Below are positions 38,619 to 60,310 of a DNA stretch of 64,000 bases, piece by piece. The translations under genes were made by a program, and so were the position numbers. The stretch is from the NCBI GenBank assembly GCA_965637545.1, contig OZ281498.1, positions 17,050,001 through 17,114,000 of the forward strand, given 5' to 3'. The notes under the pieces are model-generated. The model did no database searches. It was not told the origin of the DNA and saw only the letters and a list, made by a program, of their open reading frames with translations. This DNA is from Phallusia mammillata. Lineage: Eukaryota. Position 1 is the first letter of the stretch, and every line of letters begins with the position of its first letter.

Positions 38619-39147
38619 CCCTGGGAACGCAGCTGCGTTTCTCGCCAATAGCGGATATGTCGACGAAAGTTTTTTCTTTGTTTGTTGGCCTATAAAACAT
38701 GCAGTTGACATAATGTACTGCACATCTGCGCCCAGCATTGGCGTTAGGAGTCGCTCAGCTTTACAGACTCGTGAGTCGGTGTGAGAGGTTTTGCAACTTG
38801 CAAGTCACTGGTTGATTGTAAATGTTACCTGCTGTTTTTTATAGTTACATTTGGTTGGAATTATAACAAATGCATGTTGCATTGTTTGTGCGAATATTGT
38901 CAGTGATCTTGCAATATGCTGCTTATAGCATTTTGTATATTCGTAGTTTTTTCTTCATGTCAAAAATATTCACCCTAAAAGAAAAAAAACTCCTAAAACA
39001 ACTTATTATAATTAAAAACGGCATATACGTTCGTTAAAAATAGGATAAAACGTTGAAAAAAAAACGTTACACTGAAAAAATAAAAAAATAAAAGTCAAGA
39101 ATATTGTTTTTTTCTGTAAGTTGGTTTTTGTAAAGTATTGTCTCGAC

Positions 39148-42100
39148 ATGAAAGCAGTACGCGCCGTTTGCCTTTTGCTTTGGTTTGGAATCGAAACGGT
39201 TTGTGCCGCAACATTGGGAGGATATCTAAGATGGCGTCCGATTCCTGGAAGCACGACAGTAAGTTTTAACAAATACGTTTGCATAGTACGACGTTGTTTG
39301 ATCGAAATGGGAAAATGGTTTTATACATTGATGATACAACCTACTTTAGAAGATGTTTATTTTGTTGAATTGCATCCTTCCGATTTGTTTGTGCAAAAAA
39401 ATGGGAAATAAATACTATGCAACCTAATAGCGCACATAATTACTCCACATAAAATTAAATTTATTTTAAAAAATCAACAGTAGTTTACCGCTGATTGCAT
39501 CATGCAGTTAAAACTATTGGTATAGCACGTATGTTAATTAATCACAGTACGCCAGGCCCATTGAAGGATTTGCATATGAGTGTGCCGTGATCGCTGGTCT
39601 GCATAGACGCTTCAGGGCTGATCCCAGTTATGAATTTATGTTTTTCTTAACTTAAACACGTATGTTGCCTAGATTTCATTAAATAGCATTTATTATACTT
39701 CAATTTCTGGCATCACTAGTAATAAATGCATTCTCAGTTACTACATCAAAATACACAAAACAAAATTTGTAGGACGTAACTCTTGAGACGAGCGCTGTGT
39801 TTGATGATGCAACATGCGGCCCGTCGGGTGGCACAAGCAGTTGGGATAATTGCCCTGGTTGTAGTAGACCATGGTCATCCAGCGAAGGTACATGTATTCA
39901 AACGGACAGCGACAAAATTTGGTCTATTAACTATGCCCAGGAAACATATTTGCTTTCCGAATCAACGGCCACACCTACGTAAGTGTTATAATATTTAAAG
40001 TTTTGGGATTAAATAGTTTGTGCAAAAATTTTAAAGAATTAATTGCAACACACCCCACTATGGTTTTGAATATTTTAGCTTATATTAACTAAAGACATTA
40101 TGGTATTTTCAGGGTAATACCTACCGATTTAATTTAGCCCAAACTTTCGGTTTAAATAAACATAATAACTTCTTGTGCTAGGTTTAAACAAGTAACTTAA
40201 TCGTTAAAAAAATAACTTTTCGATCTCTTTTGTACACCCTCCAATCGTGATTGGTGTTAATAAAGTTTCGTAAAACCACAAACCTGTTTTAGTGTTAATT
40301 TATTTTTTCTTTTCCTGTGGCAGTTTAACACAAAACGGATTTGACCGTGGACCACCCCCTTCAATTGTAAATAGAATTTTAAGCACGGAAATCGACACAC
40401 GGTTTAGATCAGACACAGGAAAAGTGAACTCTCCACCAATCACGGTGCTCCGACCTGTGATCACGTGAGTTACGCTTGACTGATCCTCATAGTTCGGAAA
40501 TTATTCACTGGGCACCGGCAAAAAAGTCTTAAAACTGCCTGCAAAGTATGAAGATAAACCAAACTACTTTGTTAGTTCTGTAAGTTTGTAATCATTTTTG
40601 TTTTTCCACAAATGTTTTTTTTCCACGGGGTTCGAACTTAACGCTGCCGGGGACAAATCCCGATGAATTTGTGTTTACATGGGTCAGGCGCGCCGGACCA
40701 TTCGGCCAAGTACCTGCTAATCTGTGATTTATCGGGTATTTGTAAAAACGAGTTCAAAATTTAGAGATATTCATTGTTTCAAGGGTGAAAACCAGTTTAA
40801 GTGGCGTTTTAAACTATTTTATATGGGTACCGTCTGGTATTACTTGTTAATTTTTTTCAGTGTAAACTCCGGGTGTGAAAGGGAAATTCCAATATTTGTA
40901 CGTGACGAAGATGGAGATAATATTGAATGTCGATTACCAACAGACACCGCACACTGTGGAGACTTTTGTACCGATAGTTCTCACATTACTTTAACTGAGG
41001 TAGGCTATATTTGTGGTACAGAGCAGCTATAGATCATACAAGCGACACCATGACGTTAAAACATGTTTAAAATTGCATAACTATCATTTTTTGCCATTCT
41101 GGTTTTAATATTTGAATGTATCAGGTAAAAAGCAGCATGAATTAAGTTGTATGAAAACATGCCCTTAAAATTGATTATGTTAAATCGACGATGTATACCT
41201 TACAAAACGCGCTTTACTAAAAATCTAACGATAACAGTTTTCAATCCAAAATCCTTTATTTTTAGTCCACGTGCGTTATCACATACAACGGTGGCGGGGT
41301 TGTCACAACTGGTGATATAGTTGTATCAATGTTCATCGAAGACTTTCCAGTATCAGACATCACAGTGGGCTCAGACACCGTCACCACGTCCACCAGATTA
41401 AGCCGAGTTTCTCTGCAATTTGTAATACGAAGTAAGTCAGTTTCTGCTCCTGTTCTTTGTAGTCATCTGGATACATATTACTAAAAGAGCAAATTAGTTG
41501 TTTGCAGCTAAAGAAAAATTGGGCATGATTTGGACTTAAAACAAGGTCCGACAATGCATAGGTCATTGTTTAGTTTTGTTCAATAGTTTTGTTTAACACA
41601 GGGCTCGGCAACTTTTTTGTATTTTGTATTGTATTGTGGTTTTGAAACTGAAAACTTATCGCGGACCGGCGTTCAAAAAACTACAAATATTCAGCAATGA
41701 AAACGAATAAATTAGTTTATTATCCCTGGAATACATAGGCAAACTGTTCAAAAACATTTAACCTGAAAAACTATACAGCCCGGTAACGAACTCCTCGCGG
41801 ACCGGCGGTTGCCGACCACTGGTTTAATCGATAACATAACCATTATATCTACACATCGCCACAATGTTCAAATGCATCGGTGTACATCGGCTTCAAGACC
41901 GTTTTTTTTGTTTAACGGAACAGTGTTACATAATTCAATGTTAAGATATGGCGTCCTTATTTTGTTTTTACATTTATATTTTAGTTGAAGCGGGTTTGGC
42001 AGATTGTACCACTTTGCCGGTTTTAGCTGATTTAAGTGGTGGTGATTCTGCTGTCGTCAACACAGGAACAGTTTTCTCTCAAAATGTTGTAGCTTCCGCA

Positions 42101-45100
42101 ACCGGATCAACGTAAGTGCTTTAATATCTTTTTTTCTGAAATGAAATTGTAATTAGACAACTTTATATGCTTAACGTTCGTACAGGCACGCAGATGTTAT
42201 ACTTTGCTTCATATTATTTTGGTAGTTTTGTAACCAAGGTTTGAGTTTTCACGTACTAGCACTTTACACACAATGTTTTTGATTTACCTCATTTTAAAAT
42301 CCGAAAAAATGTCAGAAAACTGTTGACATTTTTTAACTCAAATTTTACATTCAAAAATAGAGTCACAAAAATCACCGCCTTTGGTCTAAACACTGTCACT
42401 TCATCATCTGTTACTGCGGTGGCAGGAGAAGCGGACACTTACACCGCCGATTTTACGTGGACTGCAGACGCTGTATACACGGGAGAAAACACCGTATGCT
42501 TCACAGCAGAGCTTGCTAGCGGGTACATGAAAACTCTTTCATAATTTTGAATTTGTTTGTAATATCTTTTAGCTAATTTTAGAGTGTTTTAACAGCAGAA
42601 ACAAACGCTGTCTTTTTTACAGGACTGAATCGAATCAAAGGTGCAAAACCATCACTGTCGAAGGTATTTCATTTTCGACGAGTATTTCTTAAATAATTTT
42701 GAAATGCAAAACTGTCACTTTTACATTGTATTTCGGCTTTATTTTCTAATTTCAATTGCTTAATTTTGCACATATTAATTAAATAGCGCGGAAAAAACTT
42801 CCACCAAAACTTTCGCTATCAATTCAAACACATTTGGCTATTGTGAAAATTTTAGAAATTTTTTTTTTCACAGAAGTAACCAATGTTACAACCACAGCTA
42901 CGACGGCGGCTGCTGAAGACCCTACGACAGCGGCTGTAACCACATCAGAAGTAAATCCATGCTTGACAGCCAATGGCGGTTGCAGTGACATATGCAACTG
43001 GTCAAGCGGAACGCCGGTCACGTGCTCATGTACAAACGCGTGCTGGCATTTGGCTAGGGATGGAAAGAACTGTATACGTAAGTGGAAACTTAAGTAAATT
43101 ATTGTTCTATTTGAATAAGGAACTGATCTTGTTGTAAATGTTGATCTGCGCTAACGTATATTTATTATTTGTCACAAGAATTGTATGACGATGATAGATT
43201 TATTAAGTTTTAAATAGGTGCTTGAGATTTTGATTTGGCTTACAATAGAAACAAAATATTTTTTTTACATTATTTAATGTTATCAAATAGTAATACCATC
43301 ACGATCCGTATTGTCAAATCCAAGAGAATGGCCTAAAACGTCAACTTAAATTAAGCCCAATTGAGTGTTTAGTTAAATGATTACATTGACTTCCACACCT
43401 TCTGTTGTATATTAAACAAAATACACGTGTTTATTTAGCTGAAGTCCAGCTCCTTTGTGAAGACGGTCTGGCTAAAATTTCTGTGGATAAGTGCGCAAGC
43501 TCTGGAATCATCTCAGTAAACGATTTTGATCCAATCAATTCGCCCGAAAGCATACCTTCAAACTGCCGTCCTGCTGACAACGGAACGCATACGAACTTCC
43601 AATATTCTTTGAACCTATGCGGCAGTTCCATAGTCGTAAGTTGGATACTCTTTTGTTTGCTTTTTCAATTATTATGTTCATCCTTCTTTGCAGACGTTTT
43701 CTTTAGCGAATTATAGCCTTATAGAGTATGACAGCCCTTTATATTTTGACACATTTATGAATTAAATGATCATTCAAAACAACTCCTTTGAAATAAAAAT
43801 TATCACCAGAAAACTATGTTAAAATTTGATGGAGCATAATGTATTTTATCCCATGTAGCGCGACGAAGCATCGCAATCAGAATTGAGCGCACATTTTGTA
43901 TTTTTTCATACATTTCTTCTTGCAAATTAACCCATAACGATTACTGATATAAAAAATGACAAAAACCAACCCCTTCTTAGGATAGCAGCACGGCGATCGA
44001 GTACACAAACAACGTCAAATTTTGGACAACTGATACGGGAACAACGATTACCAGAGGAACAGGTTATGTTGTTTCTGTGGTCTGTTCCTTTCCCAAGTAC
44101 AACAATCTCTCTTCGGAGTTTGACCCTTTGGATGATTTCGTCAACTTTTTGGCTGTTCCCGGACTTGGCTTCTTCACTTTTGATTTCATGTTCTACTTTG
44201 ATGAAACTTTTGGGGTACGGCTGTTTTAATTAATTACTTACCAAAAGTTTAAAAATCAAATCGAGTCCAGTTTGGGTTTGTAGTATTTTGTACTCTATAA
44301 TAATGTAAAAAAATGATTTTCAGGTTCTGTGATTGACGTTCCAGTTTTGAATCGATCAAACAAAATTACAATTAATTGATTTGGTACAACCTTATACAAA
44401 ACTACTTGTATAAACACAAATTTTTGTAGATGAAGTCCAACATATTACTCAAGTCGAGTAAAACATTTGATCACGTGGGATATGTTAAATCCACCCATTT
44501 AAAACTCGCAGATTAAACAAAATTATCGCCTTAGCCCCTGCTGTCCCCTAAAGTAAAAAAACTAATAAATAAACATAAAAAAATGCCCTGCTCAGACAAA
44601 CATTTACGTGCAGGACTGACCTTTAAGTATAAATCTGTAGTAAAATATGTAGAGTATCACCTAAATTGCGTTGGTAAATATGCATTTATTCATTACAGGT
44701 TGTACGTGGTGATACACCGGTTCGATACCCACTTAACTCGGACATCTACTTTGCAATCGAAGCAACAGGTGGTTCAGGTGTTGAACTCTTTACGGAAACT
44801 TGCATAGCTGAACCCACCGCTCCTGTTGCTGAAGGAAGTACGCCCGAACAATATACCTTGATTGAAAACGGGTAAATTTTTGTGTTATTGTTCAAATATT
44901 CATCTTTGTCACATATTAACGCCGAAAAACAAAATAGGCAAAACTTTGGAAAGATCTTTACACTATAATGTAGGTATAGCATTATTAGCAGAAATCGATA
45001 AAACTAAAACCCAAGGACGATAACACTCCCAGTTTTCCGGTTGTGAAGTGAATTGCCTATTCGCTTGCCAACAGCTAATCATTTAAGCCCAAACGTTACG

Positions 45101-48100
45101 CCTATGACAATATGGATTAATCAATCTTTTTACGTATATTGAAAACTTTACGGCGTAGTTAAGGCATATTTGAAGCAATCTGCTTTTCTCGCTACGGTTC
45201 GTGAGATTGACATATAGTTTCGATATCTTATGGGTTTGGCTTTCCTTTAGCAAACTTTGGAGGCACCCGAAACAGCACAATAATAGCAGTAGTTCGATGA
45301 AAAGTGACATGTACCGATGAAAGACCTTTGCGCTTCATTAGTTATCGCCATTGGTTCGTCAAAACAGTTTGGACAGTTGCACGCCCTTGCCTTTGATAGA
45401 AGTGTCAAGACATACATTAATTATGCCTGATGTTAACCTTATAATCCTTAAAGAACGAGTGGGTGGCAGTTTGTTCGGGGGAGAAAATACACATCATTAT
45501 CAAAACAAATGTTTTCATTTACAATACAATTTTGAATAAAAAATATCTAAAGGTCAGGAAAGTAACTAGAGAAGTGACCAAAATGACTTGATCAGCTCCG
45601 ATATTTATGGTATAACTTGCCAAACAAATAAATAGAAACTCTTGTTGGTAATTTGGTCTGTAAAACAGATATCTCCCAATGAGAAAAAATGGCACCGCGA
45701 TACAGAGTTTATTAAAAACAGATGGAATTGAAAGAAAATGAGCCCAAATGAATTATAAACCAAAATATACGTGCTATATATTTGATAATTAAATGTTGAA
45801 AATGTTGTTTGATCAGATGTCTTGGCGATTTTACAATGCGGTCATATGAATCAACCAATCCGATGCACAACCGTTTCAGCATCAAGGCATTCCGCTTCGT
45901 TGATTCTCTTCCTGGTTTAACCAACGACACCAATGTTGCAATCAAGGTAATTGTATTGTACAACAGTATGTGCTGCACTTAAAAGAAAGTTCCAAAAAGC
46001 TAAGATGAATATGTTCACACTGGGATCAGCCCTGAAGCGTCAATACAGACCAGCGATCACGGCATACTTATCGATAAATCATAGTACTCCAGGTCCACTG
46101 AAGGTGTTAAACCCCTTTAATAGGCCTGTCGTACTATGAAGGTTCCAAAAAACTTTTTTTTCATGCTTATTGTTTGGAAAAAAACGCCTAGTTGAAAACA
46201 TAAAAAAACGCGAATTAATGTACATATTTTGGTTTCGCATGTAAGGAAGTGTTCTTGAAAAATAGCAACTCTTAAAAGCATAACGTTTTTAGTACATATA
46301 TTAGTGGAAATTAGGAAAAATCGAATAGGCTGCTCTCCACGTATTCCAAAATTTTAATTTCCTGTTCGTTGGCAGTGTTACGTTGTGGTCTGCGTCATTG
46401 ATTCCGCGACAACGACCCGTTGTTCCCGTGGATGCGTGACGTCACCGGTGAGAAGGAGGCGTGACGTGAACTACGGGAAAAGGTAAGGTTTTACTTGACG
46501 GCAGATTTGAGCCTCGTTCCCATGAATTCGAGTTACTAGATACAACAAATAAATTTTGTGGTGAATGTTTAAAAAAATGCAATATCCTGTGATAAAAGAC
46601 CTCATGAAAAGCTTTGAAGTGAGTTAATATTTAAATTCGGTTTGATCCTGAATAACGGTATTGCGAAAGTTTGTGGCAAACTTATGTAGGAGCAACAGTA
46701 GGTTGGAAATATATCTGGAGAGTTTTTTTCAGTACACATTAGCTGTACAATGACAGTATGAATGATGTGTGTTCTTATGGAATGACATAAACATGCACAA
46801 ATGGTAGCAAAGATTTTTGCCATTACATTGAAACAATAAGATAGTTAGAGAAACTTCTTTTTGTGGGTGTCAAACAGAAATCGATTTCCCTGAATTTATT
46901 TGGTAACGTTTAAATGCTAAAACTTTATGATCACGATTAGGTTAACTATAATTGTATCGTTTTGTTTATTTGTCGGTATTACAGACTAAAAAGACAGACT
47001 TCGTCTTTTAACCAGACCGTTGAGCAAGAGGTCTTTGAGTCTACAGCTCATCTGGTAGCAAGTGTTGAAGTCCAGCTGGAAAAGGAAAAAAATGGTAAGT
47101 GATTATTCCATGTTTTTGAGGAACAAACAAATGTGAGAAAACAATAAACCAAAAAAAGGAAAATGTTGCAGTTAATACACACCACAACGTGGCGCAGTCG
47201 CTGGCAAACGTATTTATCGCAAAAAATAAACCTTTATATAAGCATGAAACCTACATCAAGGATAATGTTAAAAAATCCACACCCTATAGTAATCTTATCA
47301 TTCATGTCCTTATGGAAGTGACCTATTCAAACCACATTTTCGCCTGCACCTTGATTTTTTCAAGGGTCCTCCTAGACATGGCATTTATAAGACGACAAAG
47401 AAAATACTCGCAAGACAAACAAACTGTTAGGTTGTAACTCTTCACCCAAACTTCAATAGTTACACTCAATTGCTCACTTCTAAAATGTGAGTATAGTGTT
47501 GTTGCCAGGCATTTTTGTGTTGTTGTCACGTTCCGTTTTCACGGGTACGCAAAAGATTGGGACTGACTATCGGAAGTTCCTTAATAGCTAACGTACGTGT
47601 ACTCTGATCGGCAGCAAACCTTTCCTTTCACATTTATTCACGTCCAACAACACGTAATTAAAACAACAAATTCACTAGTCCGGCGCTACTTCGGAGTTAT
47701 CTCTGTTTTATCTTATATTCTATATCTTAAATCGTTGGGTGAGGGCGCTTATATATCTTGCGTTACAATTCGGGGAAAAAGGCGTTAACTCGCTATGACC
47801 ATTTCCGGAAGATAATAACAATGAACACTGTATATAGCGAGTTTTGGCGATGTGATAAAACTGGCACAATAGAACAATAACAACACAATAGCGTCTGCAA
47901 CCATAGACTCGAGACGAGCAGAAATTACCCATGATCTGTGGTAACTGGGTTGCGGGATATTGTCATGGGCGGTCTAGAACATTTGTGACAGTTGTTACCC
48001 ACATTCATTGATTTATCACAATTATAAAGCGGATCAAATAAATATGTTCCGCCTGTGTATCAGAAAACTTGTTGGATTGGAGATGGATACTTCTGATCAT

Positions 48101-48281
48101 AGCAGCAGCATTGGGAGCTGCCCTTGTACTTCTGGCGTGTTGCAGATGTTGCTGGATCTATCCTCTGGGAAGAAGGAGGAGACGAAAAAAGGAAGAAGAC
48201 GAGTTAGAAAACCAAGACAGTGGCATCGACAACGGAGCTTTTAAAGTTCCAAAATGGTACAAGATTCCCATTGGCCACTAG
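39148..48281 (+). CDS. ZP-domain type I membrane protein with Sib-like/cadherin-like N-terminal region, Thr-rich linker and EGF (paralog A), about 821 aa
   Basis: 16 exons: 39148-39258, 39773-39978, 40324-40464, 40861-40999, 41266-41431, 41985-42111, 42361-42522, 42623-42663, 42874-43077, 43439-43635, 43981-44214, 44699-44871, 45817-45946, 46376-46482, 46985-47094, 48064-48281 (2466 nt, in frame). Signal MKAVRAVCLLLWFGIETVCA; ZP motifs VQLLC, LCGSSIV, VVCSF, FTETCIAEP, RFSIKAFRF, CYVVVC; furin site RRRR; TM WILLIIAAALGAALVLLACC. AATAAA at 48493. Confidence 0.9.
41599..41821. mobile_element. hAT MITE
   Basis: CAGGGCTCGGCAAC...GTTGCCGACCACTG; flanks GTTTAACA/GTTTAATC. Confidence 0.75.
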
Positions 48282-49936
48282 GGGGAGACATCGAGTCACA
48301 ATTTTTGTTGTACTGATGTAAAGTCAAATGAAACCTGGATTTCTCAATACATTATGTAGTGTACTGCTTTTTTTTGATAAACCTATAAATAACAAACATT
48401 TTCACCGTACTGCTTTTTATTTAGTTTCTTTAATCGTACCTTTTGCTTTGGTCCTTTGGCCATTGCTATAACGCACGTTATACTATTTGTACAATAAACT
48501 AGCGCAGATATGTGGTTATGGATGTACAGATATCAAAAGGTAACATTATATATGTTAATGTTAAACATGTTTTGAGAATATTGGTCGGTGTCAAACTTAC
48601 CTACAAGTAAAAACAAAGGGGCGGCACACATTTTTTCACAAACATTTAAAAATCATTGTTTCAAACTGCATTAGTTTCGTAATTGCGATTTCGCAATTTG
48701 TCGTCAACTTAAGCGTTAAATATACAAGGTGATCCGCAAACTTTTCAGTTTTTTTTAAAGGTACCTACAATTTGCTTGCCCACTTGAAGACCAACGTAAA
48801 TGCGTTGTTGTAATTAAATATTTATTACACAAACGGAAATTTGGATTCGTCAGTTTAAAGTTACGTTAATTTTTCCAAACTTATCGCTATTACGACGTGG
48901 CGGGTAAATTTGATATAATTTCACAGAGCTATCTGGGATATCCAAATATTGATCCGGCTAATCACAAACAATAAGACCAAAACCCCATTGAAATCAACTG
49001 CTATTTGTAGTTACACAAAAGAGCGTTGGTCCATAGAGTAAAGTAGACTAAAGTTAAAAAAAAATCTACAAATCTACAAAAAGTTGTACTAAAAAACTCG
49101 ATATGACATAAAAAATTCAATATAATCTCAAGCTCTTGTCCTTGGCGACCCTGCAAAAAACGCTTTGCAAAGTTTTGGAACAGTTGATATAAAGTATCAC
49201 ATGTTTGCAACAGTTGATGTTTTGGGAATTCTCACCCCGGAATTAAATCAGGCAGATAATTTTTGTTAAAAAAATAAAAAATAAAAAAAGGCCTTTAATT
49301 AAAGCAGTTCCAAAATGGCATGCATTCGTATAGAGACATTTTGCTGAAGGTTTGCACCTGAAAAAGTTGTTTATGGCTTAAAAATGCGGTAGAGCCAATA
49401 ACACCACTCCTCACGGCAGACCCAAATTTAGCTTATTTTCTATAAGTGGCGCAGGAGCGGAATTATTTACTATTTATTTTTCAATACAAACTATAACTTC
49501 TATTGTTAGTTTTATTGAATTTTGAATGCTAATGCCTTACCGCGACCCTAATAGTCCTAACCGTGAGCATTTTTGGAGATGTATTGCTTCAAATGACAAA
49601 AGTGCTCTTTGCGCCACCTATCGAAAATTAGCCAAATGTAGGTCTGCCGTGAGGTATGGTGTTAGTAGATTTTCCTTAAAAAGCAATAGAAAGTTGATGG
49701 TGCGCATTGTATCATGGAAAACTGTTGAATACGTAAATCACGTTCAGCTTTGTTCTCGTTTAGATCTCCACTCGTTCTTAAGTGCCAATATGTCACGCAT
49801 ACTTGAAATTTAAAAAACAAGCGAAAACACCTACACATTTAATTTGCAAAAAGGTAAGTTAATTGGTAATTCGGAAATCTAACCGCCGCCAGACTCTCAT
49901 ACAAAGTGGTGCCTATGGTGCGGGAAAATAGCAGTT

Positions 49937-52900
49937 ATGGATTGTAAACTGTTATTTGCCGTTTTTGCTGTGTTTTTTCTTAATTATGCTGATTGCTCTT
50001 TTTTCGGTGGGACTGTTAAGTGGAGGTTCTTGACGCAGTACGAAAGCGTGTCTGAGGTGGGCGACAATCTTTATTTATTTCGGCAACTTTTGATACGTAG
50101 AGGAATTAAATACCACTAAAAATCCTGTGCAGTAATAGTTGTGTTGAAGTCCAGGCAAAAACATTTATATCGAGAAAAGGCATTTTTTTAACCAACAAGT
50201 AGAGATTCAAAAAAGGATAGTCATTTCTTAATAGACAAAATCTCAAAACTGAATTTACGCAAGATATTGTTATTTAGGGTTATTTGGTTTATCATTTATG
50301 TTTCTCAAAATCATTCTCACTTCTTCGTTTCGTTGCGTCGCTTGAAAAGGAACCCATATTTTTACACCCTCAAATTAAATATCTTAAACCTACCAATTAA
50401 TTTACTGCCTGACTCACATCGACATGATTATTTTTTTAGGTCGAAACTTCTCAAACAGTTTTCCTTTCAACCGACGAAGTTTGTTCAGTGGGCGAATGGA
50501 CTTGCAGTGCAGGCTGTTCTGGGACTTTAATCGTTGATGATGCAGCTACGGCAACTTGTGACGTTACCAGTACCCACGGAGGATGGAAAATTGCCGAATA
50601 TGTTGAACGTGTGAATTTCACGTTAGATACCACCAACATTGTTCAGTCGTAAGTATGAAACTTTTCTGATATTTTAAGATTTAGAACTTTAATTTTACCT
50701 TATCCAATATATCTTGTGTTATTTTTCGACATCATCTGCATGGTTTTGAAAAAAAGCTTTGGTTGTAGATCTCCCAGATGCTGTTGGACAGAAATTGATG
50801 GCGATATCCCAGATTTCGGACTGTCGTATTCAGCAAATGTGAATCCACGCTCCGACACAGGATCCCCTAATCATCCACCACAAGTAGTATTAGATCCACT
50901 GGTCAGGTAATTAGCAATTTTCGATGATGGCAAAGAAAAAATACTTGATTGTAAAAAATGCTTGAGAGGGAAAACAGATAGATTATATTGTGCAACTCTA
51001 CTTCTCCGAATCGAAAGATCCCAGTTGAGATGGTTTGGCCATGTTAGCAGAATGCCTCAGGAAAGGCTTCCCAAACAATCTTTGCTTGGCTCGATCAAGT
51101 TGAAAGTTTAACTTGAAATCGTTTGGGACTATCTAAATTCTAAATGAAGTGAAGGAATTGGTGAAAGATCGTGAAGTGTGGAGGCTCAATCTTGAGCTGC
51201 TGCCCCCGCGACCATCAGTTAAGGATTAAGCGGGACAGAAAAATGATGATGATGATTAACAAATAAGATTTACGTTTGTAATTTTTCAGATTGCGATCCG
51301 GTTGCGTCAAAGTTGTCGATATCCGCGTCACTGATGACGACGGTGATGATGTCAGGTGCCGAATCGGAACTAATGAACTAGAGTGCGGATCCAGTAATTG
51401 CGGAGACTATCGATATTTTTCTCTGGACGAGGTCTGTGAATCACAAAAGTTACAAATTATTGAACCCATCATTCGGTACCATTTGACGAGCGGGTTCGCG
51501 TTTTGACTGGCTTTAGGATTTTAATTTCTAAAAAAAGTCCGGTTTGATGTGGAACATGATTTAACAATCGTATTGCGCGGGCCATCGAACAAATTGTCTT
51601 TTGTACAACTTACTTGAGGTAAAAATACATTCTTGTCTATGGACAGAGTTTGGACTCAAGTAAATTCAAAATATATTCAAATTCAGTTTGGGTTAGAGAT
51701 GAGTAAGTAACATTAAGATCCCGTTAGGGCTGTTATCAAATAAAGGTTTTTATTTTTTCAAATAATCAAATAATTTAAATAATTTAGAATACCTGATACA
51801 TAAAGCCCCGAGTCATAATTCAATAATGATAGATGAAATTACTGAACGAAATTGGTAATCTCTTAGTCATTAAATCTAAGCTACATCTTTTTTTTTTGTT
51901 TAAAATAATAAATTAGTACAGATAGATACATGCTTCAGTTATTCTCCGTATTTTGGGATAACCATACGTATTTCCATGTGTATTTTTTCACTTTATTTCA
52001 ACAGATTTTAAGGGGAACTTGCTGAATTGAATTGTGATCTATATCTATAACATTTTAATCACTTGTTGAATAATCTAAATTTTTAACCTATGAATTGGGT
52101 TAATGAACATTTATATAAGGCTAAAAACATATGTTGCAGTAACCGCAATTTCATAAAAATGTCACCAATGTGTTCAAGTAAATTGATTTTGCACATATAT
52201 CGAGGTATACTGCATAGGAAAAAATTATTTGATTATTTGAAATGAGTAAAAAATTATTTGATAAATTTTCAAATGATACAAAATTTCAAATAATCAAATA
52301 ATAATTATTTGTTTGATAACAGCCCTAGGTCCTATACGGAGAAAAAATTGAATGAAATTTTCCCTCAGATGTTGTCACAGTCAAAAAACAACAATCAACG
52401 ACGATATAAATGATTTGTGACAACTACTCCATGGATTGGCTTTGCTGCTATTTACTTTATTTATTATCTAAAAAAATGTTGTAGGGAAACTGTCGTCTTT
52501 TTTACAACGCCGGTGGCCCAGGTGATGTTAGATACGGAATTCGAATCGTCATCGAAGATTTTGCGCAGGCAACTGTACAGATCGGCAACGCCACATTCGG
52601 AACGGATGACGTACTTAGTTACGTCACTGCGCAATTTACAGTTGAAGGTGCAAAATGTGCAAATATACTGCAATACTTTTCGATTTATTTTTCGATCCAA
52701 AAAATGTAATGATACACCCACGACGATAAAAGTGGTTTCTGGACGACTTACAGATGCCTAAGCTTGAAGGTAAAGCTTTGTTCACAGAAAAACTGTCCTG
52801 AATCACAAATCCTCAATTTGCAGGATCTGAAAAATAAGTGATATAGATGTATTGAAAGCTCCAGTGCTGTATTTTCGAGCTGAAGTAATTCCCACTTTTT

Positions 52901-55900
52901 CTTTTTCAGTGTATTCGGATGACACGACAACCTGCAACCATGAGCCATTTTTCATTGATCCAACTCCACCAGATGGACAAACTATCGCAATAGCGAATGG
53001 AGCAACGTTCTCTACGACGTTGTACGCCTCCCCAAGTAACTCGGAATGGAGGTCGGTATGCGTATAAAATACAACATGCCTTGAAAATATTTTTGTGTTT
53101 CCTAAACACTACATAGGTTTCGATTTTTTCGGCATCGTTTCGTTTCTATTTGATATTTTTTTAACAAAATATCAATCATTAATGATTGATAAATCATTAA
53201 TGAATTGACAGCTGTAACGCAATTTTTACTTTTTTGTTTGATTTAAAGCTATTTTGTATTACTTGTTCATTTACTGGGTGCAACGTCCTTAAAACTTATT
53301 TAAGTGGTGTCTTTTTTTGTAACTGAATCAATGCATGTAACTTTTTGATCAATAAATGTTTTGTCTGTTAAAATACACACTAAAGAGGCATATATTACCC
53401 TCAAAGAGGTTTCTTCGGTTCACGTTTTACGAAACTACCACGTTGTACAACTTGAAATGTCACGCACAAGCATTTACGAACAAAGGGCCGTTACACCGTT
53501 TTTCATTTCAAATTAGACAAGAAATTGCCACTTTTGTCTATGACAACAAGCAAATCAATCTACTACTTTAAACTTGTTTTTTTTTCACAAGCATATCAGA
53601 ATTTGTGGTTTTGGGCGCCTCGAGTGCTGTAATATCGGGTGTTACATCGGATGATAGCAACGTTTACAGCGCGACTGTGCAGTGGAGCGAAGCGGCTACC
53701 GGAGGTGGAAATCATTTGTTGTGCTTCGTTGCCGTGGATTCACAAAGGTAATTTGAATAACTTAGTTTAGTAAGGCTAAAACAAGAGTATTTTGAAAACA
53801 ATAATTGGATTATTGATTTGTCACAGCAAGTCAGTGTGTCTGCAAAGTGAAAGCTAAATTTTGTTCGAAAACCGGAAGAAAACTATTGATTTCATTCTTG
53901 GTTGACATATGAAAATAGCGACGAAATATGCAAAAAATTCATCTGTTACAAAAAGCCTAGACTATTTTAGCTTAAAGTTGGCTGATCATGATTCCAAGGA
54001 AAGCAAAAAGATCCGATAACCTCTTGCTAAACCCCATTGCAGGCCAAATACTTCGATATTTTTAACGCATGGCCATCAGTCAGCTCATGTTAAAATATGC
54101 CCAAAGTACAGTGGTGAGAATCAATCTGCTTAGCAACTGGTTCGCTTAAACACCCATTGTTGATCACAAGCCATATATGGGAACCCTCCGTATGATGATT
54201 ATAATAGATCCACTCGACAAAGTTTGGCATTAACCGGTTCTCTCCCGAACCCATGCGAACCATCCGAATCCTACCACTCCCAAAATCTCATTACAAAATC
54301 ATTGTATTTCACAGTCATTCTTCAAGTCAGCATTGCATCACACTCGTGGTGGCAGGTAAGCCGTTTGATTTTTTGTTCACTACAAACTAAGTTGCCAAGC
54401 AACCAAAACTTAATTTCAGACAGCAACGATCCGTGTGATGTAAGTAATGGCGGATGTAGCGACAGATGTGTATGGGACGGTTCAGCTCCTTACATTTGCG
54501 AATGCTTCAGGTCCTGCTGGCATCTGGCAGCTGACCAACGAAATTGTATACGTGAGTTTTAATTTATAAATTGCTCAAGTGTGTCTAGTGCCAAATAAAA
54601 CAAATTTACAAGTAGTTGGACCTGTCAAACTCGAAATATCGATGAAAAATTTAAACAAAATTTAAACACTTTTAAACAGTGTCCACACTTGATATTCTAT
54701 GCTTTAATTGTTATTATTGTATTTGGCTAGTCTTTAAGACAACCAACTTTACAAGTTTCAACCAGTGGTGCACAACTTTTAGTTATTAACGGCCGAAAAA
54801 CAGGTCCTTGTTTCACCGACGGCCGCCAAACGTGTCTGAATGTTTTTTTGTTTGTTTTGAAATAAATGATTAAAAATACATAAATTCGTCTCTGATTCCG
54901 TACGGTTGTGCACCCCTGGATTAAAAAAACAATACTAACTAGATCTTAGAAATAAGTTGCGTAATAAGTAAGTCCTTTTCAGTGTGTGGGTTTATGGCGC
55001 AAATAAAACTTGTGGGGGGTAAAACGTATAAAATGCCACACAGGGCAAATTAGGCAAAAACGTATATTATTTTAGCTATGTTTGAAACAACTTGTGGGAG
55101 TGACGACATAACAGTGACTATTCCATCTTGTGCTGTGGACGAACTGATTGCCTTGTCTGACTTTGACACCGCATCACAGGATCTGACGCCAAACGAATGT
55201 CGCTATTCAAACAACGACACGTTTTATTGGTTCCAGTTTGGATTTCAAGATTGCAGCACCACATCTGAGGTGAAGACAAAATCTACTAACAGCTGTAACT
55301 GAAAATGTTTATAAAAGATGAAACTGTTTTGAGCCAACCGTTCACAAAAAAATTCTAAAAATGTTGAAAAGGTTTCGAAAGGGGTGAATTGGAATTCGGA
55401 AATTAAAGTCTGTATTCCAGTCTCTATTCTTTTGTACGCAAGAGTAAATATGCTTTCAAAATGATTTTCTTTTTAACGTTTTTACATGCTGCTTCTAAAA
55501 CTATTGTGCCATTCTTCTTTGGCATTTGAAACCTAAGGTGTTTATAAAACGATTTTTATTTTATCTACCAATCGTGTAGTTTGATCACCAATCCCTATTA
55601 TTGCATTGATCGTAACATAACACATTTAGGAGGACCTTCTTGAAATAAGATACGACAATTCGATTCGAATGTGGGTGAATCCTGAAGGAGAGGAAGGCTC
55701 AGGTTCTATAACACGAGGCCAGTGGTACAATGTCGCCATAAGATGCTCATATCCCAAACATGGATCGGTAAACGGGACATTTACTCCAGTAGAACAAGAA
55801 GTCAATCTGCTTTCAGTTCCTGGCCTTGGGACTTTCAGCTTTTATTTCAATTTCTTTAGCGATGTCTCGTTCGAAGTGAGTGAATGCTTAAGTCGTTTTT

Positions 55901-58582
55901 CAGATATTTGGTTTGAACTTATTTCAAACGCCACATTAAGCTTGTGGACAAACGGTTTTGCAATTAGAATCATTTTTGAACATAAATCCCAGCAAAAACA
56001 TACTGCAAACAGCAAAGAACGTATGGATATAAAATCTAACTTACTATAAAACTGTCCCAACAACAAATTTCAAGTCAAAAATTAGAGATATTTTTTATTC
56101 CCAAATTAGTGGTAATTTGTGCTAGTCCAAGATTTGCTTGAAAATGTTTTGCTCTGTACGCGTTTTGTAGCAAATTGCAGGTGGTACTTCACTCACATGA
56201 ATATACAACACACCCCTTTTTAGTACGCTTATTCGCCGATTGAGTATCCTATTTCTTACGTGTTGAACTCCGACATATACTTTGGCATCGAAGCAAGAGG
56301 AGGTTCAAACTTGGATTTATTCACTGAAACTTGTGAGGCGAAGCCAGTCACTCAAACTGACACAACTGACACTTACGAGATGATTAAAAACGGGTAAGAT
56401 ACCATTTCTTGCAGAAAACCCTTATCTGACGTAAGGCGAGAATAAGTAAATAGTTGTGATGCACACTAAAACCTAGTTTAAAAAAGAGTGGTGTGGGTGA
56501 AAAAAATAGAAAACAAAAATATTTTGTTGCCAGTTTAAAAACCCATTGTGTTATACATGATCTACGAAAATAGTCTTCTAAACTTAAACGATTTTTACTA
56601 ATAATGTACAATAATTGTTTAACCTATATCTAGGGCGGCCACAATTTCCCAAGTCATTGCTTTTATAAGTGTTATTGATGTGTGTGAAGCAAGTGATCCA
56701 AAAATACACAAGCTAGGTTCCATGCGCATTTGCAACGCATAATCGACAAAGTTAATGAAGGTCCCCTTCGCACGAAAGCGTCGGTGTTTGTTTTTCTAGA
56801 TTTCAAGGTTACCTTTAAATTAAAGACGACTTACGGGAACAACGTTTATTTATCATAACAAACTCAAAGGACTGGTTGTGAGTTTTCTAACAAACCACTC
56901 TCTGCATGAAACTCATACAATCTTGTGAAAACAATCAAACGTTTTAATCAATGCTCATAGAATGATTGACATTCAAAGCATAGTTTGTCCAAGTCATTTT
57001 GGTAAGTTATTGTATGCTTGTTTTGTGTTTAGTTGTTTGGAAGATGACACGATGCTAAATTACGATATTGACGAACAACCGCTGGAGAATCGGTACAGCA
57101 TTAAGGCTTTTCGATTTCGCGATGGACTTCCGAACATCACCGCCAATACTAATGTGTACATCGAGGTGCGTATTTTTACCTTTGACTGCTTGTCAAACAG
57201 TTTTTATTACTGAGAACAGAAAACTGGTGGCATATATCAAAATGCAAACTCTTTGTTTGTCTAATTCAAAAACAAAACGTCCAACCGGTTACATTACGAA
57301 ACAACGAGATTAATTTCATCAACTTTTATTATAAATTACCATGACGTCACAAAAAGAACGACAAAAGTACCAAATGATAATGTAATTGCATTTTGAAAAA
57401 TGTCGAATTACCACTTTAGGGGTAATTGACCAGAACCACTGGTATAAAGGCACCTGTAAACACTACAAAACCGTTTAAAAGCATTTTTACGTAAACAAAA
57501 AAAATAGTATCAAAACCTAAGAATGCATTTCGGCTGTGCAGTGCACTGTTCGTCTTTGTGTGGCATCTGACAACACGACGCGGTGTTATGAAGGCTGCGT
57601 ATCTTCCGCTGAAGCCAGAAAGAAACGCCACTCTGATGAGGATTTGTGGGATAATGAAAACGCCCTGGGTGTTGCGCACACTCGGTAAGAAACATTTAAA
57701 TTGAGTGTGCATATTGCTTTGATATGCACAGGCAATAAAACTTTATAATTTATAAGAACTTTCAATGCAAGTTAGGACAATATCAATATCTGTTTTAGTG
57801 GGAGAATTTTAGCATTCTCAACTAAACTCACTCACATATGCCATATGCCTCGTAACACTTTAGTTTTGTCGCAATTTGTTTCAAAGACTCATTTGCAATA
57901 ATTTCGCGTTAAACCCGTCAGACAAAAAATGTTAACAAATGCGAAGTTATGTTAAGCTACATTTGCTTTCCAACTTTTGAATGGCTTCGATTGTTTTGGG
58001 CAGCAAATATAGGTTTATTATTAAGCGAGGAGCTATGGCTAATTATAAGATCCTAGGTGTTAAATGTGATGAAAAACTGGCCTAGAAAAACTGGAAAAAA
58101 ATTACAACAGATTTGCATGGTTTATTTTGTTCAACAGGAGTAAACGCCAACAAGAAGTTCGACAGAGTGATTCACATCCCGTAGGAGGAAACAACGCCAT
58201 CCGAATTCAAGTGGTAATTTCAAGTAAGCATCTTACATTGCAGTAAAAATAATCTTTACTAAGATATTTTTAAGCTGGATGTACGAGTACAACTTTATTT
58301 TATCCTTCTGTGTATGCAGACAATACAGTTGTGGTAGAAAATGACACACCAACAGATGATGGTACACAGCAAACCCTAATTATCATCGCAGCATCGGCGG
58401 GATCGGTGATATTTGTGCTACTTGTTTTAACTACAGTGTATGTTAGCTATCAATCCAAGAAACGAAAGGAGATGTTAGCAGCAATCATGCCCTTGAATCA
58501 CCCAGGAACACCGCCAAGTGGTCAATGGGCAATTAAGGTCCCTCCGCCGTACTTTGAAGGTGACTCAGTAAAAAGAGAGTAG
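49937..58582 (+). CDS. ZP-domain type I membrane protein with Sib-like/cadherin-like N-terminal region and EGF (paralog B), about 825 aa
   Basis: 16 exons: 49937-50056, 50440-50648, 50769-50906, 51290-51431, 52485-52647, 52910-53051, 53592-53747, 54315-54355, 54420-54551, 55076-55269, 55630-55875, 56224-56393, 57033-57165, 57542-57684, 58138-58223, 58320-58582 (2478 nt, in frame). Intron phases identical to paralog A. Signal MDCKLLFAVFAVFFLNYADC; furin site RKKR; TM LIIIAASAGSVIFVLLVLTTVYV; cytoplasmic PPPY. AATAAA at 59102. Confidence 0.9.
50998..51256 (+). mobile_element. 5'-truncated RTE-clade LINE 3' end (Rex3/Expander-like)
   Basis: Translates [30 protein letters not shown] (RTE ORF C-terminus), followed by GCTGCTGCCCCCGCGACC (Rex3-type 3' motif) and an (ATG)n microsatellite tail; internally deleted and decayed. 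Confidence 0.8.
51725..52327. mobile_element. hAT-type MITE with TAGGGCTG ends
   Basis: 16-bp perfect TIR TAGGGCTGTTATCAAA; AAATAATCAAATA subterminal repeats; TSD decayed (5/8). Confidence 0.8.
54763..54918. mobile_element. Short hAT MITE
   Basis: CAGTGGTGCACAAC...GTTGTGCACCCCTG; TSD not preserved. Confidence 0.65.
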
Positions 58583-60310
58583 ATTTACGTTGCCGACCAA
58601 AGCACGGTAAAGTATAATTGAACACTTTGTACATGATTGATAACTTACAATGATTATTTGATGTATGTGTACATTTTGATTTACTATCTTATTACCGACT
58701 TTTCATACCTGATTCTTATGAATTATGATTGTCTGTGAATAGTTTACCATGCAAACTTTTAACTGAAGCTGAACTTTCTAACGCCTCCGTCATATTATAG
58801 ATTAAACCAACAGCCACGTGCCGTATACTTTCGCAATCGCGTTGACTTAATGTCGCGACCGTTGTTTATATGCATTGACTTTGCCTCATGACTCAAACGG
58901 ACACGGAAAGAATTAATCGATTCATTCATAAAACATTTCTTATACTAAACCCATACACTTTTTTGTTGTTTGTCATACAAAACACAGCTGATTTTATTAA
59001 AGCCTCTCACTTTCCTAACCCCAGCCCCAAAACTAGCTTGTAAAGATTTCTTCAAGTTACCGGTGGGTCTTTTCCCAATTTATGCCATACAGCTACCGAT
59101 AAATAAATCGTGTAAATAAAAGCATATATCTAATTAAACCCAGTATGATGTCGTCTATTGGTTTTCGATTTTATTTGCTGCACTGTCTACCTTCCATAAC
59201 CTTAACCGAAAAAAATCGAGCTACCCATAGTAAATCTAGAAAAGAGGCTTTGGTATATGTAGCCAATTGACCATACTTGCAACGAATATACAAACGTTAC
59301 GTAATTTGAAATTCTTATCTCTTTCTGCCATTTTCAGGGTAAAACCGGCGCCAAATTACTTTTTCAAGGTCTTTTGCAAAAGTTGGCTTTTTTCAAAACT
59401 TTTCCAGGCCTTAAAAATACAAATTTAAATTCCATAACCTTCAGGTTTTCCATACCCGCGGGAACCCTGTTTGAAAGCTAAGTGATTTAAAAATGTTCCT
59501 TTAAAAAACGATGACAAATTGACATCGGTATTCAAGTTAAAAATAGCCAATGCAATGGAGAGGTTTGCTTAAGTTTATGAACGATTTCGCCGACTCAAAG
59601 TGTACGTTTTTAGCTCACCTCAAGCAACTGTAAATACCCTGAAGGAGCTGGTCTAGCCTTTGACGGAACTTTTATTGTCGAATTTTGGATTAGGAACAAA
59701 CAAATGAACACAATTTCACATACACACATCAAGACAGTGAGGCAGCGTTACAACATTGCACAGACACAGACAAGTATAATTAATTGAACCAACACAAGTA
59801 AGCGTACAAACAACGAAAATATGACAAGGTTTGCAATAATCGGTGTTAAAAGCAAAATTATAATCTCGCCGTTTCCGCCTGAGAAATACAAATGTGGCAT
59901 TGCAGCAGTACATTTTTGACACTTGTGTATATTCTAGCTGTTCTTAGTACTAATACTTAGAACGCAGCATTGTATGTTAAATGCTTGCGTCGGTGCCTTA
60001 TTGTAATACTTTTTAGAATAACTTAATAAGATTTAGAGATGCAAGGAATTCCAAAACCTTTTTATTGCAATTTGCGGATAAAATAAAGTTACCTTTATTA
60101 AAGGGGAGAAAATGAAACAACTGCTCCGTTGTTATATTATTACGTACGATAGGGCTGATAACACCTGAGCGAGCGCGGCCTGGAGTAATTGGAAAAACTA
60201 TTCGTTTAAATCGGCAAAACCACAAAAAGAACAACCTCTTAGAAGTTCACGGTTATTTGGATTAGGCATAACATTTGACATTTCTTAAGAAATATAACGT
60301 TAAACGGTGT

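What the first reader, a model, noticed from the sequence alone, without database searches (positions are those of the whole stretch)
39148..58582. Tandem paralogs fusing an unnamed Sib-like/cadherin-like head to an EGF-ZP tail
Seen: both proteins (identical 15-intron phase series 0,2,2,0,1,2,2,1,1,0,0,2,0,2,1) share, ahead of the EGF, a roughly 350-aa region with GGxxxWR right after the signal peptide, RSDTGxxNxPP, GCxxxxxIxVxDxDGDxxxCR, CG, IEDF, LSxVxxQF, and a further beta-rich repeat ending WxxxxxxxGxxxxCFxA. Knowledge (from memory): this motif series resembles the N-terminus of Dictyostelium Sib (integrin-beta-like) adhesion proteins and many uncharacterised marine invertebrate and bacterial surface proteins; NxPP plus DxDGD recalls cadherin-like Ca-binding folds. 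I know no vertebrate ZP protein with this head. Inference: an uncharacterised family of polymerising adhesion or microbe-binding matrix proteins, and the best candidate for an undescribed system in this window.
Basis: partly seen in the sequence, partly recalled or inferred. Interest (0 to 1): 0.78.

Follow-up and report, generated by a model that had tools for sequence, protein, structure and literature searches.

The report
Sib-like-headed ZP matrix protein gene pair
Two neighbouring sea-squirt genes encode membrane-anchored, filament-forming (ZP) matrix proteins whose large outer head is the same three-domain module found at the tip of amoeba Sib adhesion proteins and some bacterial adhesins; the family runs from corals to bony fishes, yet I found no study of any member.

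Summary
Two intact + strand genes lie in tandem, g1 at 39148-48281 (821 aa) and g2 at 49937-58582 (819 aa). Each has 16 exons, all 30 introns are GT..AG, and both show the phase series 0,2,2,0,1,2,2,1,1,0,0,2,0,2,1. The proteins are 33.5% identical. Three g1 introns are confirmed by spliced contigs from public runs.

Architecture: signal peptide, a ~345-aa head, one EGF, ZP-N/ZP-C, a furin-type site (RRRR / RKKR), a hydrophobic patch, a TM helix and a short tail.

The head is not nameless. It matches a 360-position family profile end to end (190-210 bits). Coral members of that family pass Pfam's threshold for PF24907 (SIBA-E_N). A homologue's head folds with pLDDT 90 into three beta-sandwiches: the N domain, a cadherin-like/He_PIG-type Ig carrying DxDGD, and a third Ig.

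At least 120 listed ray-finned fish ZP proteins, of 233 hits, carry this head. So do proteins of Styela, amphioxus, echinoderms and corals.

Most likely function (inferred): cleaved ZP filaments displaying Ca-stiffened adhesive arms. This is an unstudied variant of ZP matrix proteins, of moderate interest. The scan had not noted this family before on other DNA.

The parts
39148..48281 (+). Gene g1, 16 exons, 821 aa. Exons: 39148-39258, 39773-39978, 40324-40464, 40861-40999, 41266-41431, 41985-42111, 42361-42522, 42623-42663, 42874-43077, 43439-43635, 43981-44214, 44699-44871, 45817-45946, 46376-46482, 46985-47094, 48064-48281.
   Evidence: Model built by hand. All introns are GT..AG. Introns 5, 6 and 11 are confirmed by spliced contigs.
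49937..58582 (+). Gene g2, 16 exons, 819 aa. Exons: 49937-50047, 50440-50648, 50778-50906, 51290-51431, 52485-52647, 52910-53051, 53592-53747, 54315-54355, 54420-54551, 55076-55269, 55630-55875, 56224-56393, 57033-57165, 57542-57684, 58138-58223, 58320-58582.
   Evidence: Model built by hand. It has the same phases as g1 and all introns are GT..AG. The exon 6 donor (53051, or 53021 instead) is the least certain boundary.
39148..42663 (+). g1 signal peptide plus Sib-like head (aa 1-364, exons 1-8). N domain about aa 21-146, cadherin-like Ig with DxDGD about aa 147-255, third Ig about aa 256-364. Exon 8 is a 41-nt micro-exon.
   Evidence: A head profile built without the window proteins matches aa 24-363 at 189.7 bits; the N-domain profile gives 25.1 bits.
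49937..54355 (+). g2 signal peptide plus Sib-like head (aa 1-364, exons 1-8).
   Evidence: The head profile matches aa 21-363 at 210.3 bits; the N-domain profile gives 36.6 bits.
40406..40933 (+). g1 conserved linker motif RSDTGxxNxPP (40406-40438) and the GC...DxDGD...CR loop (40871-40933). Candidate Ca site at the junction of domains 1 and 2. The g2 equivalents are 50848-50880 and 51300-51362.
   Evidence: These columns are invariant or nearly so across 42 family heads: D170, D172, D174, C160 and C178 invariant; R136, D138, N143 and P146 at 90% or more. Ca binding itself is inferred.
42874..43077 (+). g1 exon 9: a Thr/Ala-rich linker (42888-42950, g1 only) plus the EGF domain. The g2 EGF exon is 54420-54551.
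   Evidence: Pfam FXa_inhibition-type EGF, E 2.5e-5 for g1 and 7e-5 for g2.
43439..46482 (+). g1 ZP module (ZP-N plus ZP-C, exons 10-14), with the furin-type site RRRR at 46451-46462.
   Evidence: Exon-level Pfam: ZP-N 20.8 bits, ZP-C 24.4 bits. It aligns through the ZP module of P0027 and P0036.
55076..57684 (+). g2 ZP module (exons 10-14), with the furin-type site RKKR at 57617-57628.
   Evidence: Exon-level Pfam: ZP-N 28.5 bits (cut-off 24.7) and ZP-C 27.4 bits (cut-off 24.6).
46985..48281 (+). g1 exons 15-16: hydrophobic patch after the cleavage site (about 47049-47078), TM helix (48078-48155) and a basic cytoplasmic tail.
   Evidence: Kyte-Doolittle maximum of 2.9 at aa 758. The role of the patch as an EHP is inferred.
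58138..58582 (+). g2 exons 15-16: hydrophobic patch (58196-58222), TM helix (58373-58450) and a cytoplasmic tail with PPPY (58541-58552).
   Evidence: Kyte-Doolittle maximum of 2.7 at aa 751-752.

Best explanation
g1 and g2 are two intact, old tandem duplicates. They belong to a conserved animal family of type-I membrane precursors.

Architecture (shown by sequence): signal peptide; a Sib-type head of three beta-sandwich domains; one EGF; a ZP module; a furin-type cleavage site; a hydrophobic patch; a TM helix; a short tail. The three head domains are the SIBA-E_N domain, a cadherin-like/He_PIG-type Ig carrying an invariant DxDxD loop, and a third Ig.

Mechanism (inferred by analogy with uromodulin and egg-coat ZP proteins, from established knowledge of those families). 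The precursor reaches the apical surface. A proprotein convertase cuts between ZP-C and the hydrophobic patch. The released ectodomains polymerise head-to-tail through ZP-N and ZP-C into filaments. The EGF plus the head project sideways as arms. The conserved RxDTGxxNxxP linker and the DxDGD loop probably bind Ca2+ and stiffen the junction of domains 1 and 2. The fast-evolving head surface binds a ligand: a cell, matrix or microbial surface.

The tissue is unknown.
For: Gene integrity, identical exon structure and three confirmed splice joints.

Tail: EGF, ZP-N and ZP-C Pfam hits on single exons, above the cut-off for g2. RRRR / RKKR after ZP-C and one strong TM segment.

Head homology: 190-210 bits over the whole 360-position family profile. 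Family members pass the PF24907 cut-off.

Fold: the AlphaFold model of the homologous head P0027:16-382 has pLDDT 90.1 and pTM 0.87, is all-beta and has three domains. The same three-domain shape is found at TM 0.83-0.87 in echinoderm ZP, mollusc and rotifer clusters and at TM 0.60-0.62 in Bacteroidota T9SS surface proteins. Domains 2-3 resemble SraP cadherin-like modules, the GspB Siglec domain and cadherin-23 at Z 8.7-9.9.

Conservation: the D-x-D-x-D and linker residues are invariant or nearly so in 42 heads.

A full-length uninterrupted transcript of a related protein shows the same architecture (P0027/L002).

Dictyostelium SibA is an adhesion molecule (PMC3279395).

In the head tree, g1 and g2 group with the ascidian clade, next to the fish clade, on long branches of 1.7-1.8.
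Against: There is no expression site, no protein-level data and no ligand.

The structure was predicted for a homologue only 31% identical to g1 and g2, because the spliced window proteins could not be handed to the tools.

I had no model coordinates, so clustering of the Asp residues into a metal site was not checked.

Single head exons of g1 and g2 give no Pfam hit.

The N domain has no convincing solved relative (best Z 6.9), so its function cannot be read from its fold.

Some ZP-module proteins, such as endoglin and betaglycan, do not polymerise.
Confidence: 0.6

Rival explanations
1. Egg-coat (vitelline coat) components. The proteins polymerise into the ascidian egg coat, and the fast-evolving Sib-like head takes part in sperm-egg or self/non-self recognition. 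This is a specific biological role within the polymer model.
For: The gene just upstream in the window was noted as a 13-EGF + ZP + TM gene of the ascidian VC120/VC70 type (not tested here). Ascidian egg-coat ZP proteins typically carry EGF domains (PMC3543715). The heads of g1 and g2 sit on very long branches. The paralogues share only 33.5% identity.
Against: The family is kept in corals, echinoderms, amphioxus and most ray-finned fishes with a conserved head, which is unlike typical lineage-specific gamete-recognition proteins. The ZP modules of g1 and g2 have no detectable similarity to the neighbouring gene at E below 1e-3. No gonad expression data are available.
Confidence: 0.2
2. A membrane-retained adhesion receptor. 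The protein stays anchored and works like Dictyostelium Sib or like the non-polymerising ZP receptors endoglin and betaglycan. The ZP module serves as a stalk or dimerisation unit, and the cytoplasmic tail handles trafficking or signalling.
For: The head is shared with the Sib adhesion receptors. The tails carry possible sorting or acylation features: PPPY in g2, CCRCC plus a polybasic run in g1.
Against: Both proteins keep a furin-type site and a following hydrophobic patch between ZP-C and the TM, which is the arrangement of polymerising ZP precursors. The tails are not conserved between g1 and g2. They lack the VWA domain and the long EGF-repeat stalk of Sib, since no such Pfam hits were found.
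Confidence: 0.15
3. Decaying or mis-modelled genes with no function.
For: The N domain of g1 is weakly conserved (25 bits). RNA support is thin: low depth, and some contigs also cover intron sequence.
Against: Both have complete ORFs across 16 exons, with 30 of 30 canonical splice sites and identical phases. All family-invariant Cys and Asp residues are kept. Three g1 joints are seen spliced. Intron positions match a Styela clava gene.
Confidence: 0.03

Closest known systems
Dictyostelium integrin-beta-like adhesion proteins SibA-E (Pfam PF24907 SIBA-E_N, PF24908 Ig_SIBA-E_2nd, PF24910 Ig_SIBA-E_3rd)
   Same: They share the N-terminal three-domain module in the same order, placed directly after the signal peptide of a type-I membrane protein. 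Family members reach the PF24907 cut-off.
   Different: Sib proteins continue with a VWA domain, repeats and an integrin-beta-like cytoplasmic tail (from memory of Cornillon et al. 2006). g1 and g2 continue with one EGF and a ZP module with a cleavage site. Chordate heads fall below the Pfam thresholds.
Uromodulin / GP2-type polymerising ZP proteins
   Same: Membrane-anchored precursor, EGF next to a ZP module, convertase site and hydrophobic patch before the anchor. In both, non-ZP N-terminal domains are expected to project from the filament as binding arms.
   Different: The uromodulin head is EGF I-III plus D8C and its anchor is GPI. Here the head is the Sib-type triple beta-sandwich and the anchor is a TM helix. 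No sequence relation exists outside EGF and ZP.
Ascidian vitelline-coat EGF-ZP proteins (HrVC70/VC120, CiVC57 type) and molluscan EGFZP shell-matrix proteins (PMC9290575)
   Same: An EGF-ZP-furin site-TM tail. The genes are arranged in tandem arrays.
   Different: Those proteins have only EGF repeats ahead of the ZP module, described as SP-EGF-EGF-ZP-TM, and no Sib-like head.
Bacterial cadherin-like / He_PIG / Big_9 repeat adhesins and Bacteroidota T9SS (CHU_C) surface proteins
   Same: Domain 2 has the same strand-loop signature (I-x-V-x-D-x-D-G-D). The whole head superposes at TM about 0.6 on T9SS proteins. One bacterial protein, P0202, has SIBA-E_N + He_PIG/Ig + Ig followed by RTX repeats.
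   Different: The bacterial proteins are long repeat arrays with bacterial secretion signals. They have no EGF, ZP or TM. Sequence identity is very low.
Uncharacterised ray-finned fish 'ZP domain-containing proteins' (e.g. P0038 Phoxinus, often mislabelled CUZD1, DMBT1-like or OIT3) and Styela clava LOC120328850/647/786
   Same: They share the head and the ZP-TM tail; the Styela proteins (except isoform P0034) also keep the EGF. They form a clade with g1 and g2 in the head tree. Intron positions are shared with Styela.
   Different: They are 24-35% identical to g1 and g2. The fish proteins show no EGF hit between head and ZP. None has a described function.

Membership tests
ZP-module proteins (Pfam ZP-N PF23344 + ZP-C PF00100) | ZP-N domain | tested here: met
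   The g2 exon 10 peptide scores 28.5 bits against a cut-off of 24.7. The g1 exon 10 peptide scores 20.8 bits while covering only 58 of 101 profile positions. Both align through the ZP-N of P0027 and P0036.
ZP-module proteins (Pfam ZP-N PF23344 + ZP-C PF00100) | ZP-C domain | tested here: met
   g2 exon 12 scores 27.4 bits against a cut-off of 24.6. g1 exon 12 scores 24.4 bits on a partial match. The homologue P0027 scores 81.4 bits over the full domain.
ZP-module proteins (Pfam ZP-N PF23344 + ZP-C PF00100) | Polymerisation apparatus: a convertase site after ZP-C, an external hydrophobic patch, and a membrane anchor | tested here: met
   RRRR (aa 703-706) and RKKR (aa 682-685), followed by a hydrophobic stretch and one TM helix, read from the sequence. 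Whether these features function was not testable.
ZP-module proteins (Pfam ZP-N PF23344 + ZP-C PF00100) | Actual filament formation | not testable with these tools
   This needs expression, cleavage assays and EM.
Sib-type head (Pfam PF24907 SIBA-E_N + PF24908 + PF24910) | N-terminal domain reaching the PF24907 gathering score (28.1 bits) | tested here: inconclusive
   The spliced g1 and g2 proteins could not be scanned whole, and single exons give no hit. Relatives pass the cut-off: P0193 33.6, P0196 35.4, P0195 28.2, P0202 41.8 bits. g1 and g2 match an N-domain profile that includes those relatives at 25.1 and 36.6 bits.
Sib-type head (Pfam PF24907 SIBA-E_N + PF24908 + PF24910) | Second and third Ig-like domains following the N domain in order | tested here: inconclusive
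   Hits to PF24908 and PF24910 in family members are all below the cut-off (E 2.3e-5 to 0.03). The three-domain order is seen in the model. The whole-head profile match is 190-210 bits.
Dictyostelium Sib proteins (full-length family) | VWA domain, repeat stalk and integrin-beta-like cytoplasmic tail | tested here: not met
   No VWA or related hit appears in any exon of g1 or g2 or in the full-length homologues. The body is EGF + ZP. g1 and g2 therefore share only the head with Sib and are not Sib proteins.
Classical cadherins | Cadherin EC repeats (Pfam PF00028) in tandem | tested here: not met
   No PF00028 hit in the family heads. There is only fold-level resemblance of domains 2-3 to cadherin-23 EC13-14 (Z 8.8, rmsd 22.7 over two domains), which is generic.
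Molluscan EGFZP / EGFL shell-matrix proteins | SP followed directly by two EGF domains, then ZP (PMC9290575) | tested here: not met
   g1 and g2 have a ~345-aa head before a single EGF. The paper describes no such head.

The most novel reading that the evidence does not exclude
The Sib-type head is an ancient Ca2+-dependent surface-binding module shared by bacteria, amoebae and animals. Fused to a ZP module, it would form a so far unrecognised class of filamentous 'flypaper' coats, analogous to uromodulin. These coats would trap microbes or mediate cell-matrix adhesion on the wet epithelia of aquatic animals from corals to bony fishes. The family was not seen in tetrapods in the hits I could list. 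The two divergent ascidian copies would be specificity variants.
Probability: 0.2. Interest if true: 0.7.

Novelty: new variant of a known kind. Interest (0 to 1): 0.45.

Why it matters
ZP-module proteins build egg coats, urinary and inner-ear matrices and invertebrate cuticles. What each one does is set by the head it displays.

This head is linked here to four groups:
- the amoeba Sib adhesion receptors;
- bacterial cadherin-like adhesins;
- a large set of mislabelled fish 'CUZD1/DMBT1/OIT3-like' proteins;
- coral, echinoderm, amphioxus and ascidian ZP proteins.

Recognising them as one family has three uses. It corrects the database names. It defines a conserved but unstudied extracellular matrix component of aquatic animals. 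It gives a tractable entry point (ascidian, medaka or carp) for asking what the Sib N-terminal module binds, which as far as I know is also unknown in Dictyostelium.

Tried and rejected
- Pfam on single head exons of g1 and g2: no hits. The exons are too short for this to count against homology.
- ESM Atlas search by features with exon 5: only 0.76-score chance-level rows.
- PDB sequence search with the head profile: nothing up to E = 10.
- Foldseek against PDB with the whole head: only generic tandem Ig and cadherin chains at TM about 0.2-0.3, because the domain geometry differs.
- N domain alone against PDB: best Z 6.9, below the level that means anything. I do not claim a new fold, only that there is no close solved relative.
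- A link to molluscan EGFL/EGFZP shell proteins: rejected, because those lack the head.
- A link to the coral skeletal-matrix 'ZP domain-containing protein' or to the DMBT1-named protein of the Desmophyllum skeleton proteome: could not be established. The accession was not found in the text or the supplement.
- Literature search for six LOC identifiers of family members and for the Pfam names: nothing.
- Tandem arrangement around Styela LOC120328786: no second family gene within 10 kb.
- A direct alignment with a Dictyostelium Sib sequence was not possible.
- Whole-protein scans, folds and database look-ups of g1 and g2 themselves were left out, because spliced sequences have no reference. The window's own proteins did not turn up in the protein libraries (best exon-4 hit 63 bits).

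Full report
**What is in the sequence.** The window has no N runs. I compared stop-to-stop ORF pieces of 39000-49000 with those of 49800-58700. This gave 12 collinear protein matches, 25-56% identical, with E down to 9e-20. From these blocks, the nearest acceptors and donors, and the requirement that reading frames join, I built two + strand gene models. g1 runs 39148-48281 and encodes 821 aa. g2 runs 49937-58582 and encodes 819 aa. Each has 16 exons, including a 41-nt micro-exon 8. All 30 introns are GT..AG. The head occurs nowhere else in the window.

**Transcription.** Contigs from public runs of the same organism hold about a third of the sampled words of g1, which is what a spliced message would hold. 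Laid on 39050-45000, they show three joints with GT..AG ends: 41431>41985, 42111>42361 and 44213/4>44698/9. These are exactly my introns 5, 6 and 11. Depth is low, some contigs also cover intron sequence, and the runs are only guessed to be RNA. This shows that g1 is spliced as modelled. It says nothing about level or tissue.

**The tail.** Single-exon Pfam scans find an FXa_inhibition-type EGF in both genes. They find ZP-N at 20.8 bits in g1 and 28.5 bits in g2 (cut-off 24.7). They find ZP-C at 24.4 bits in g1 and 27.4 bits in g2 (cut-off 24.6). After ZP-C come RRRR (g1, aa 703-706) or RKKR (g2, aa 682-685), then a short hydrophobic stretch, one strong TM helix and a short non-conserved tail. 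This is the layout of polymerising ZP precursors.

**Finding relatives of the head.**
- Single head exons give no Pfam hit.
- The spliced proteins have no reference, so I searched 1.84 billion cluster representatives with a profile of exon 4, the GC...DxDGD...CR exon.
- Of the 35 hits, several carry the motif about 150-220 residues from their start.
- Two word searches and a cluster look-up from these hits showed that the ~360-aa head is shared by many proteins:
  - three Styela clava proteins (LOC120328850, LOC120328647, LOC120328786);
  - a full-length ascidian-like transcript, P0027/L002, with the layout SP-head-EGF-ZP-TM;
  - many scleractinian coral proteins (head + EGFs, with or without CUB, + ZP);
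  - a brittle star and a sea cucumber (head + ZP);
  - amphioxus (head + EGFs + ZP);
  - a sponge;
  - oyster 'integrin beta-like protein A';
  - rotifer 'integrin beta A'.
- A third word search, from the fish hit P0038, returned 233 proteins. All 120 listed are ray-finned fish ZP proteins. Their database names are 'uncharacterized', 'ZP domain-containing', or mislabels such as CUZD1, DMBT1-like or OIT3.
- A head profile matches each of these fish proteins. For most it covers all 360 positions, with E values for those full-length matches of about 1e-62 to 1e-120; about ten give only partial matches.
- A profile built without the window proteins matches g1 aa 24-363 at 189.7 bits and g2 aa 21-363 at 210.3 bits.
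- blastp aligns g1 and g2 to P0027, P0036 and P0034 at 31-35% identity across head, EGF and ZP.
- The window's own proteins did not turn up in the libraries.

**Naming the head.** Pfam now has three families made for the N-terminus of Dictyostelium SibA-E.
- PF24907 (SIBA-E_N) is passed by coral ZP proteins P0193 (33.6 bits) and P0196 (35.4 bits), by sponge P0195 (28.2 bits) and by P0202 (41.8 bits). The cut-off is 28.1 bits.
- P0202 sits on a dense, prokaryote-type metagenome contig. It continues with He_PIG / Ig_SIBA-E_2nd, then Big_9 / Ig_SIBA-E_3rd, then RTX repeats.
- Other members, including the oyster and ascidian ones, give only sub-threshold hits to the three SIBA-E families, to PKD, He_PIG, Big_7 and Big_9.
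- The exon-4 profile also picks up bacterial proteins made of Big_9, He_PIG and Cadherin_4/5 repeats.

'Unnamed' is no longer accurate, and the statement about vertebrates is wrong.

**Fold.**
- With a 42-sequence alignment, the head of P0027 (residues 16-382) folds at pLDDT 90.1 and pTM 0.87 into three all-beta domains.
- In the ESM Atlas the whole head superposes at TM 0.83-0.87 on echinoderm ZP-protein and rotifer clusters. It superposes at TM 0.75 on a mollusc cluster and at TM 0.60-0.62 on Bacteroidota T9SS (CHU_C / Por tail) surface proteins.
- Against solved structures, domain 3 and domains 2-3 look like ordinary Ig, PKD or cadherin-like modules. The matches are GspB Siglec, SraP cadherin-like modules and cadherin-23 EC13-14, at Z 8.7-9.9.
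- The N domain folded alone (pLDDT 79.5) has no convincing solved relative; the best Z is 6.9.
- The profile finds nothing in PDB by sequence.
- Across the 42 heads the invariant columns are three Asp of the DxDxD loop, a further Asp (D225) and three Cys. R, D, N and P of the RxDTGxxNxxP linker are at least 90% conserved. In the model's secondary structure these fall in the linker after domain 1 and in a loop early in domain 2.
- A Ca2+ site at this junction is my inference. I had no coordinates to check it.

**Evolution.** In a maximum-likelihood tree of 24 heads, g1 and g2 join the ascidian clade (support 85/89), which sits next to the fish clade (80/85). Both lie on very long branches (1.7-1.8, against a median of 0.69), and their relation to each other is unresolved. 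The intron positions of Styela LOC120328786 line up with those of g2 after a ~25-aa offset. The duplication is therefore old and the heads evolve fast.

**Function.**
- Shown: the architecture, its conservation and the splicing of g1.
- Inferred: convertase cleavage, ZP polymerisation into filaments with EGF + head as side arms (by analogy with uromodulin and egg-coat proteins), Ca2+ stiffening of the head, and ligand binding by the head. SibA is an adhesion molecule in Dictyostelium (PMC3279395).
- Rivals: an egg-coat role, suggested by the neighbouring VC-type gene and the fast-evolving heads; a membrane-retained receptor; non-functional genes.
- I found no paper on any member. The only literature traces are entries in RNA-seq tables.
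- Molluscan EGFZP shell proteins share the tail but have no head.

**Verdict.** The genes are new members of an unstudied, widely conserved family: ZP matrix proteins with a Sib-type head. I rate this a new variant of a known kind, of moderate interest.

Noticed in passing
window 42888-42950: g1 has a Thr/Ala-rich, mucin-like linker of about 21 aa between the head and the EGF. g2 and the Styela and Logan homologues lack it. It is probably an O-glycosylated spacer.
   Followed up: no
window 58541-58552 and 48130-48180: The cytoplasmic tails differ. g2 carries a PPPY motif, a possible WW-domain or Nedd4 site. g1 has CCRCC at the end of the TM helix, followed by RRRRRKK, which suggests possible palmitoylation and a basic anchor.
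   Followed up: no
window 39567-39652, 40679-40717, 41757-41827: Short stretches inside g1 introns are covered at high depth by many contigs that run on into unrelated sequence. They look like dispersed repeats of this genome.
   Followed up: no
window 50962-51111: An ORF in g2 intron 3 contains ...LRWFGHV..., which I recall from retrotransposon reverse-transcriptase tails. Pfam finds nothing.
   Followed up: partly
window 42623-42663 and 54315-54355: A 41-nt micro-exon (exon 8, phase 2 into phase 1) is kept in both genes. It encodes the conserved Q-x-C-x-T strand at the end of the third head domain.
   Followed up: partly
window 52219-52285: An AT-rich 29-bp tandem repeat, 2.3 copies, in g2 intron 4.
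   Followed up: no
L001 3121-7011 (metagenome contig): A bacterial protein, P0202, has SIBA-E_N + He_PIG/Ig + Ig + RTX repeats. It overlaps by 8 bases a CarboxypepD_reg-repeat gene and is followed by a transglutaminase-core gene. This may be a bacterial adhesin operon carrying the same head module.
   Followed up: partly
P0005 (Nothobranchius furzeri LOC107395574) and P0012 (Gambusia affinis): These fish proteins carry two or three Sib-like heads in tandem, at 17-365, 401-726 and 756-1071 in P0005. So the head also exists as a repeat unit in vertebrates.
   Followed up: no
window 42954-43079 and 54428-54553: The EGF domain has seven Cys rather than six in g1, g2 and P0027. The extra Cys lies in a C-x-C-x3-C stretch and may pair outside the EGF.
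   Followed up: no
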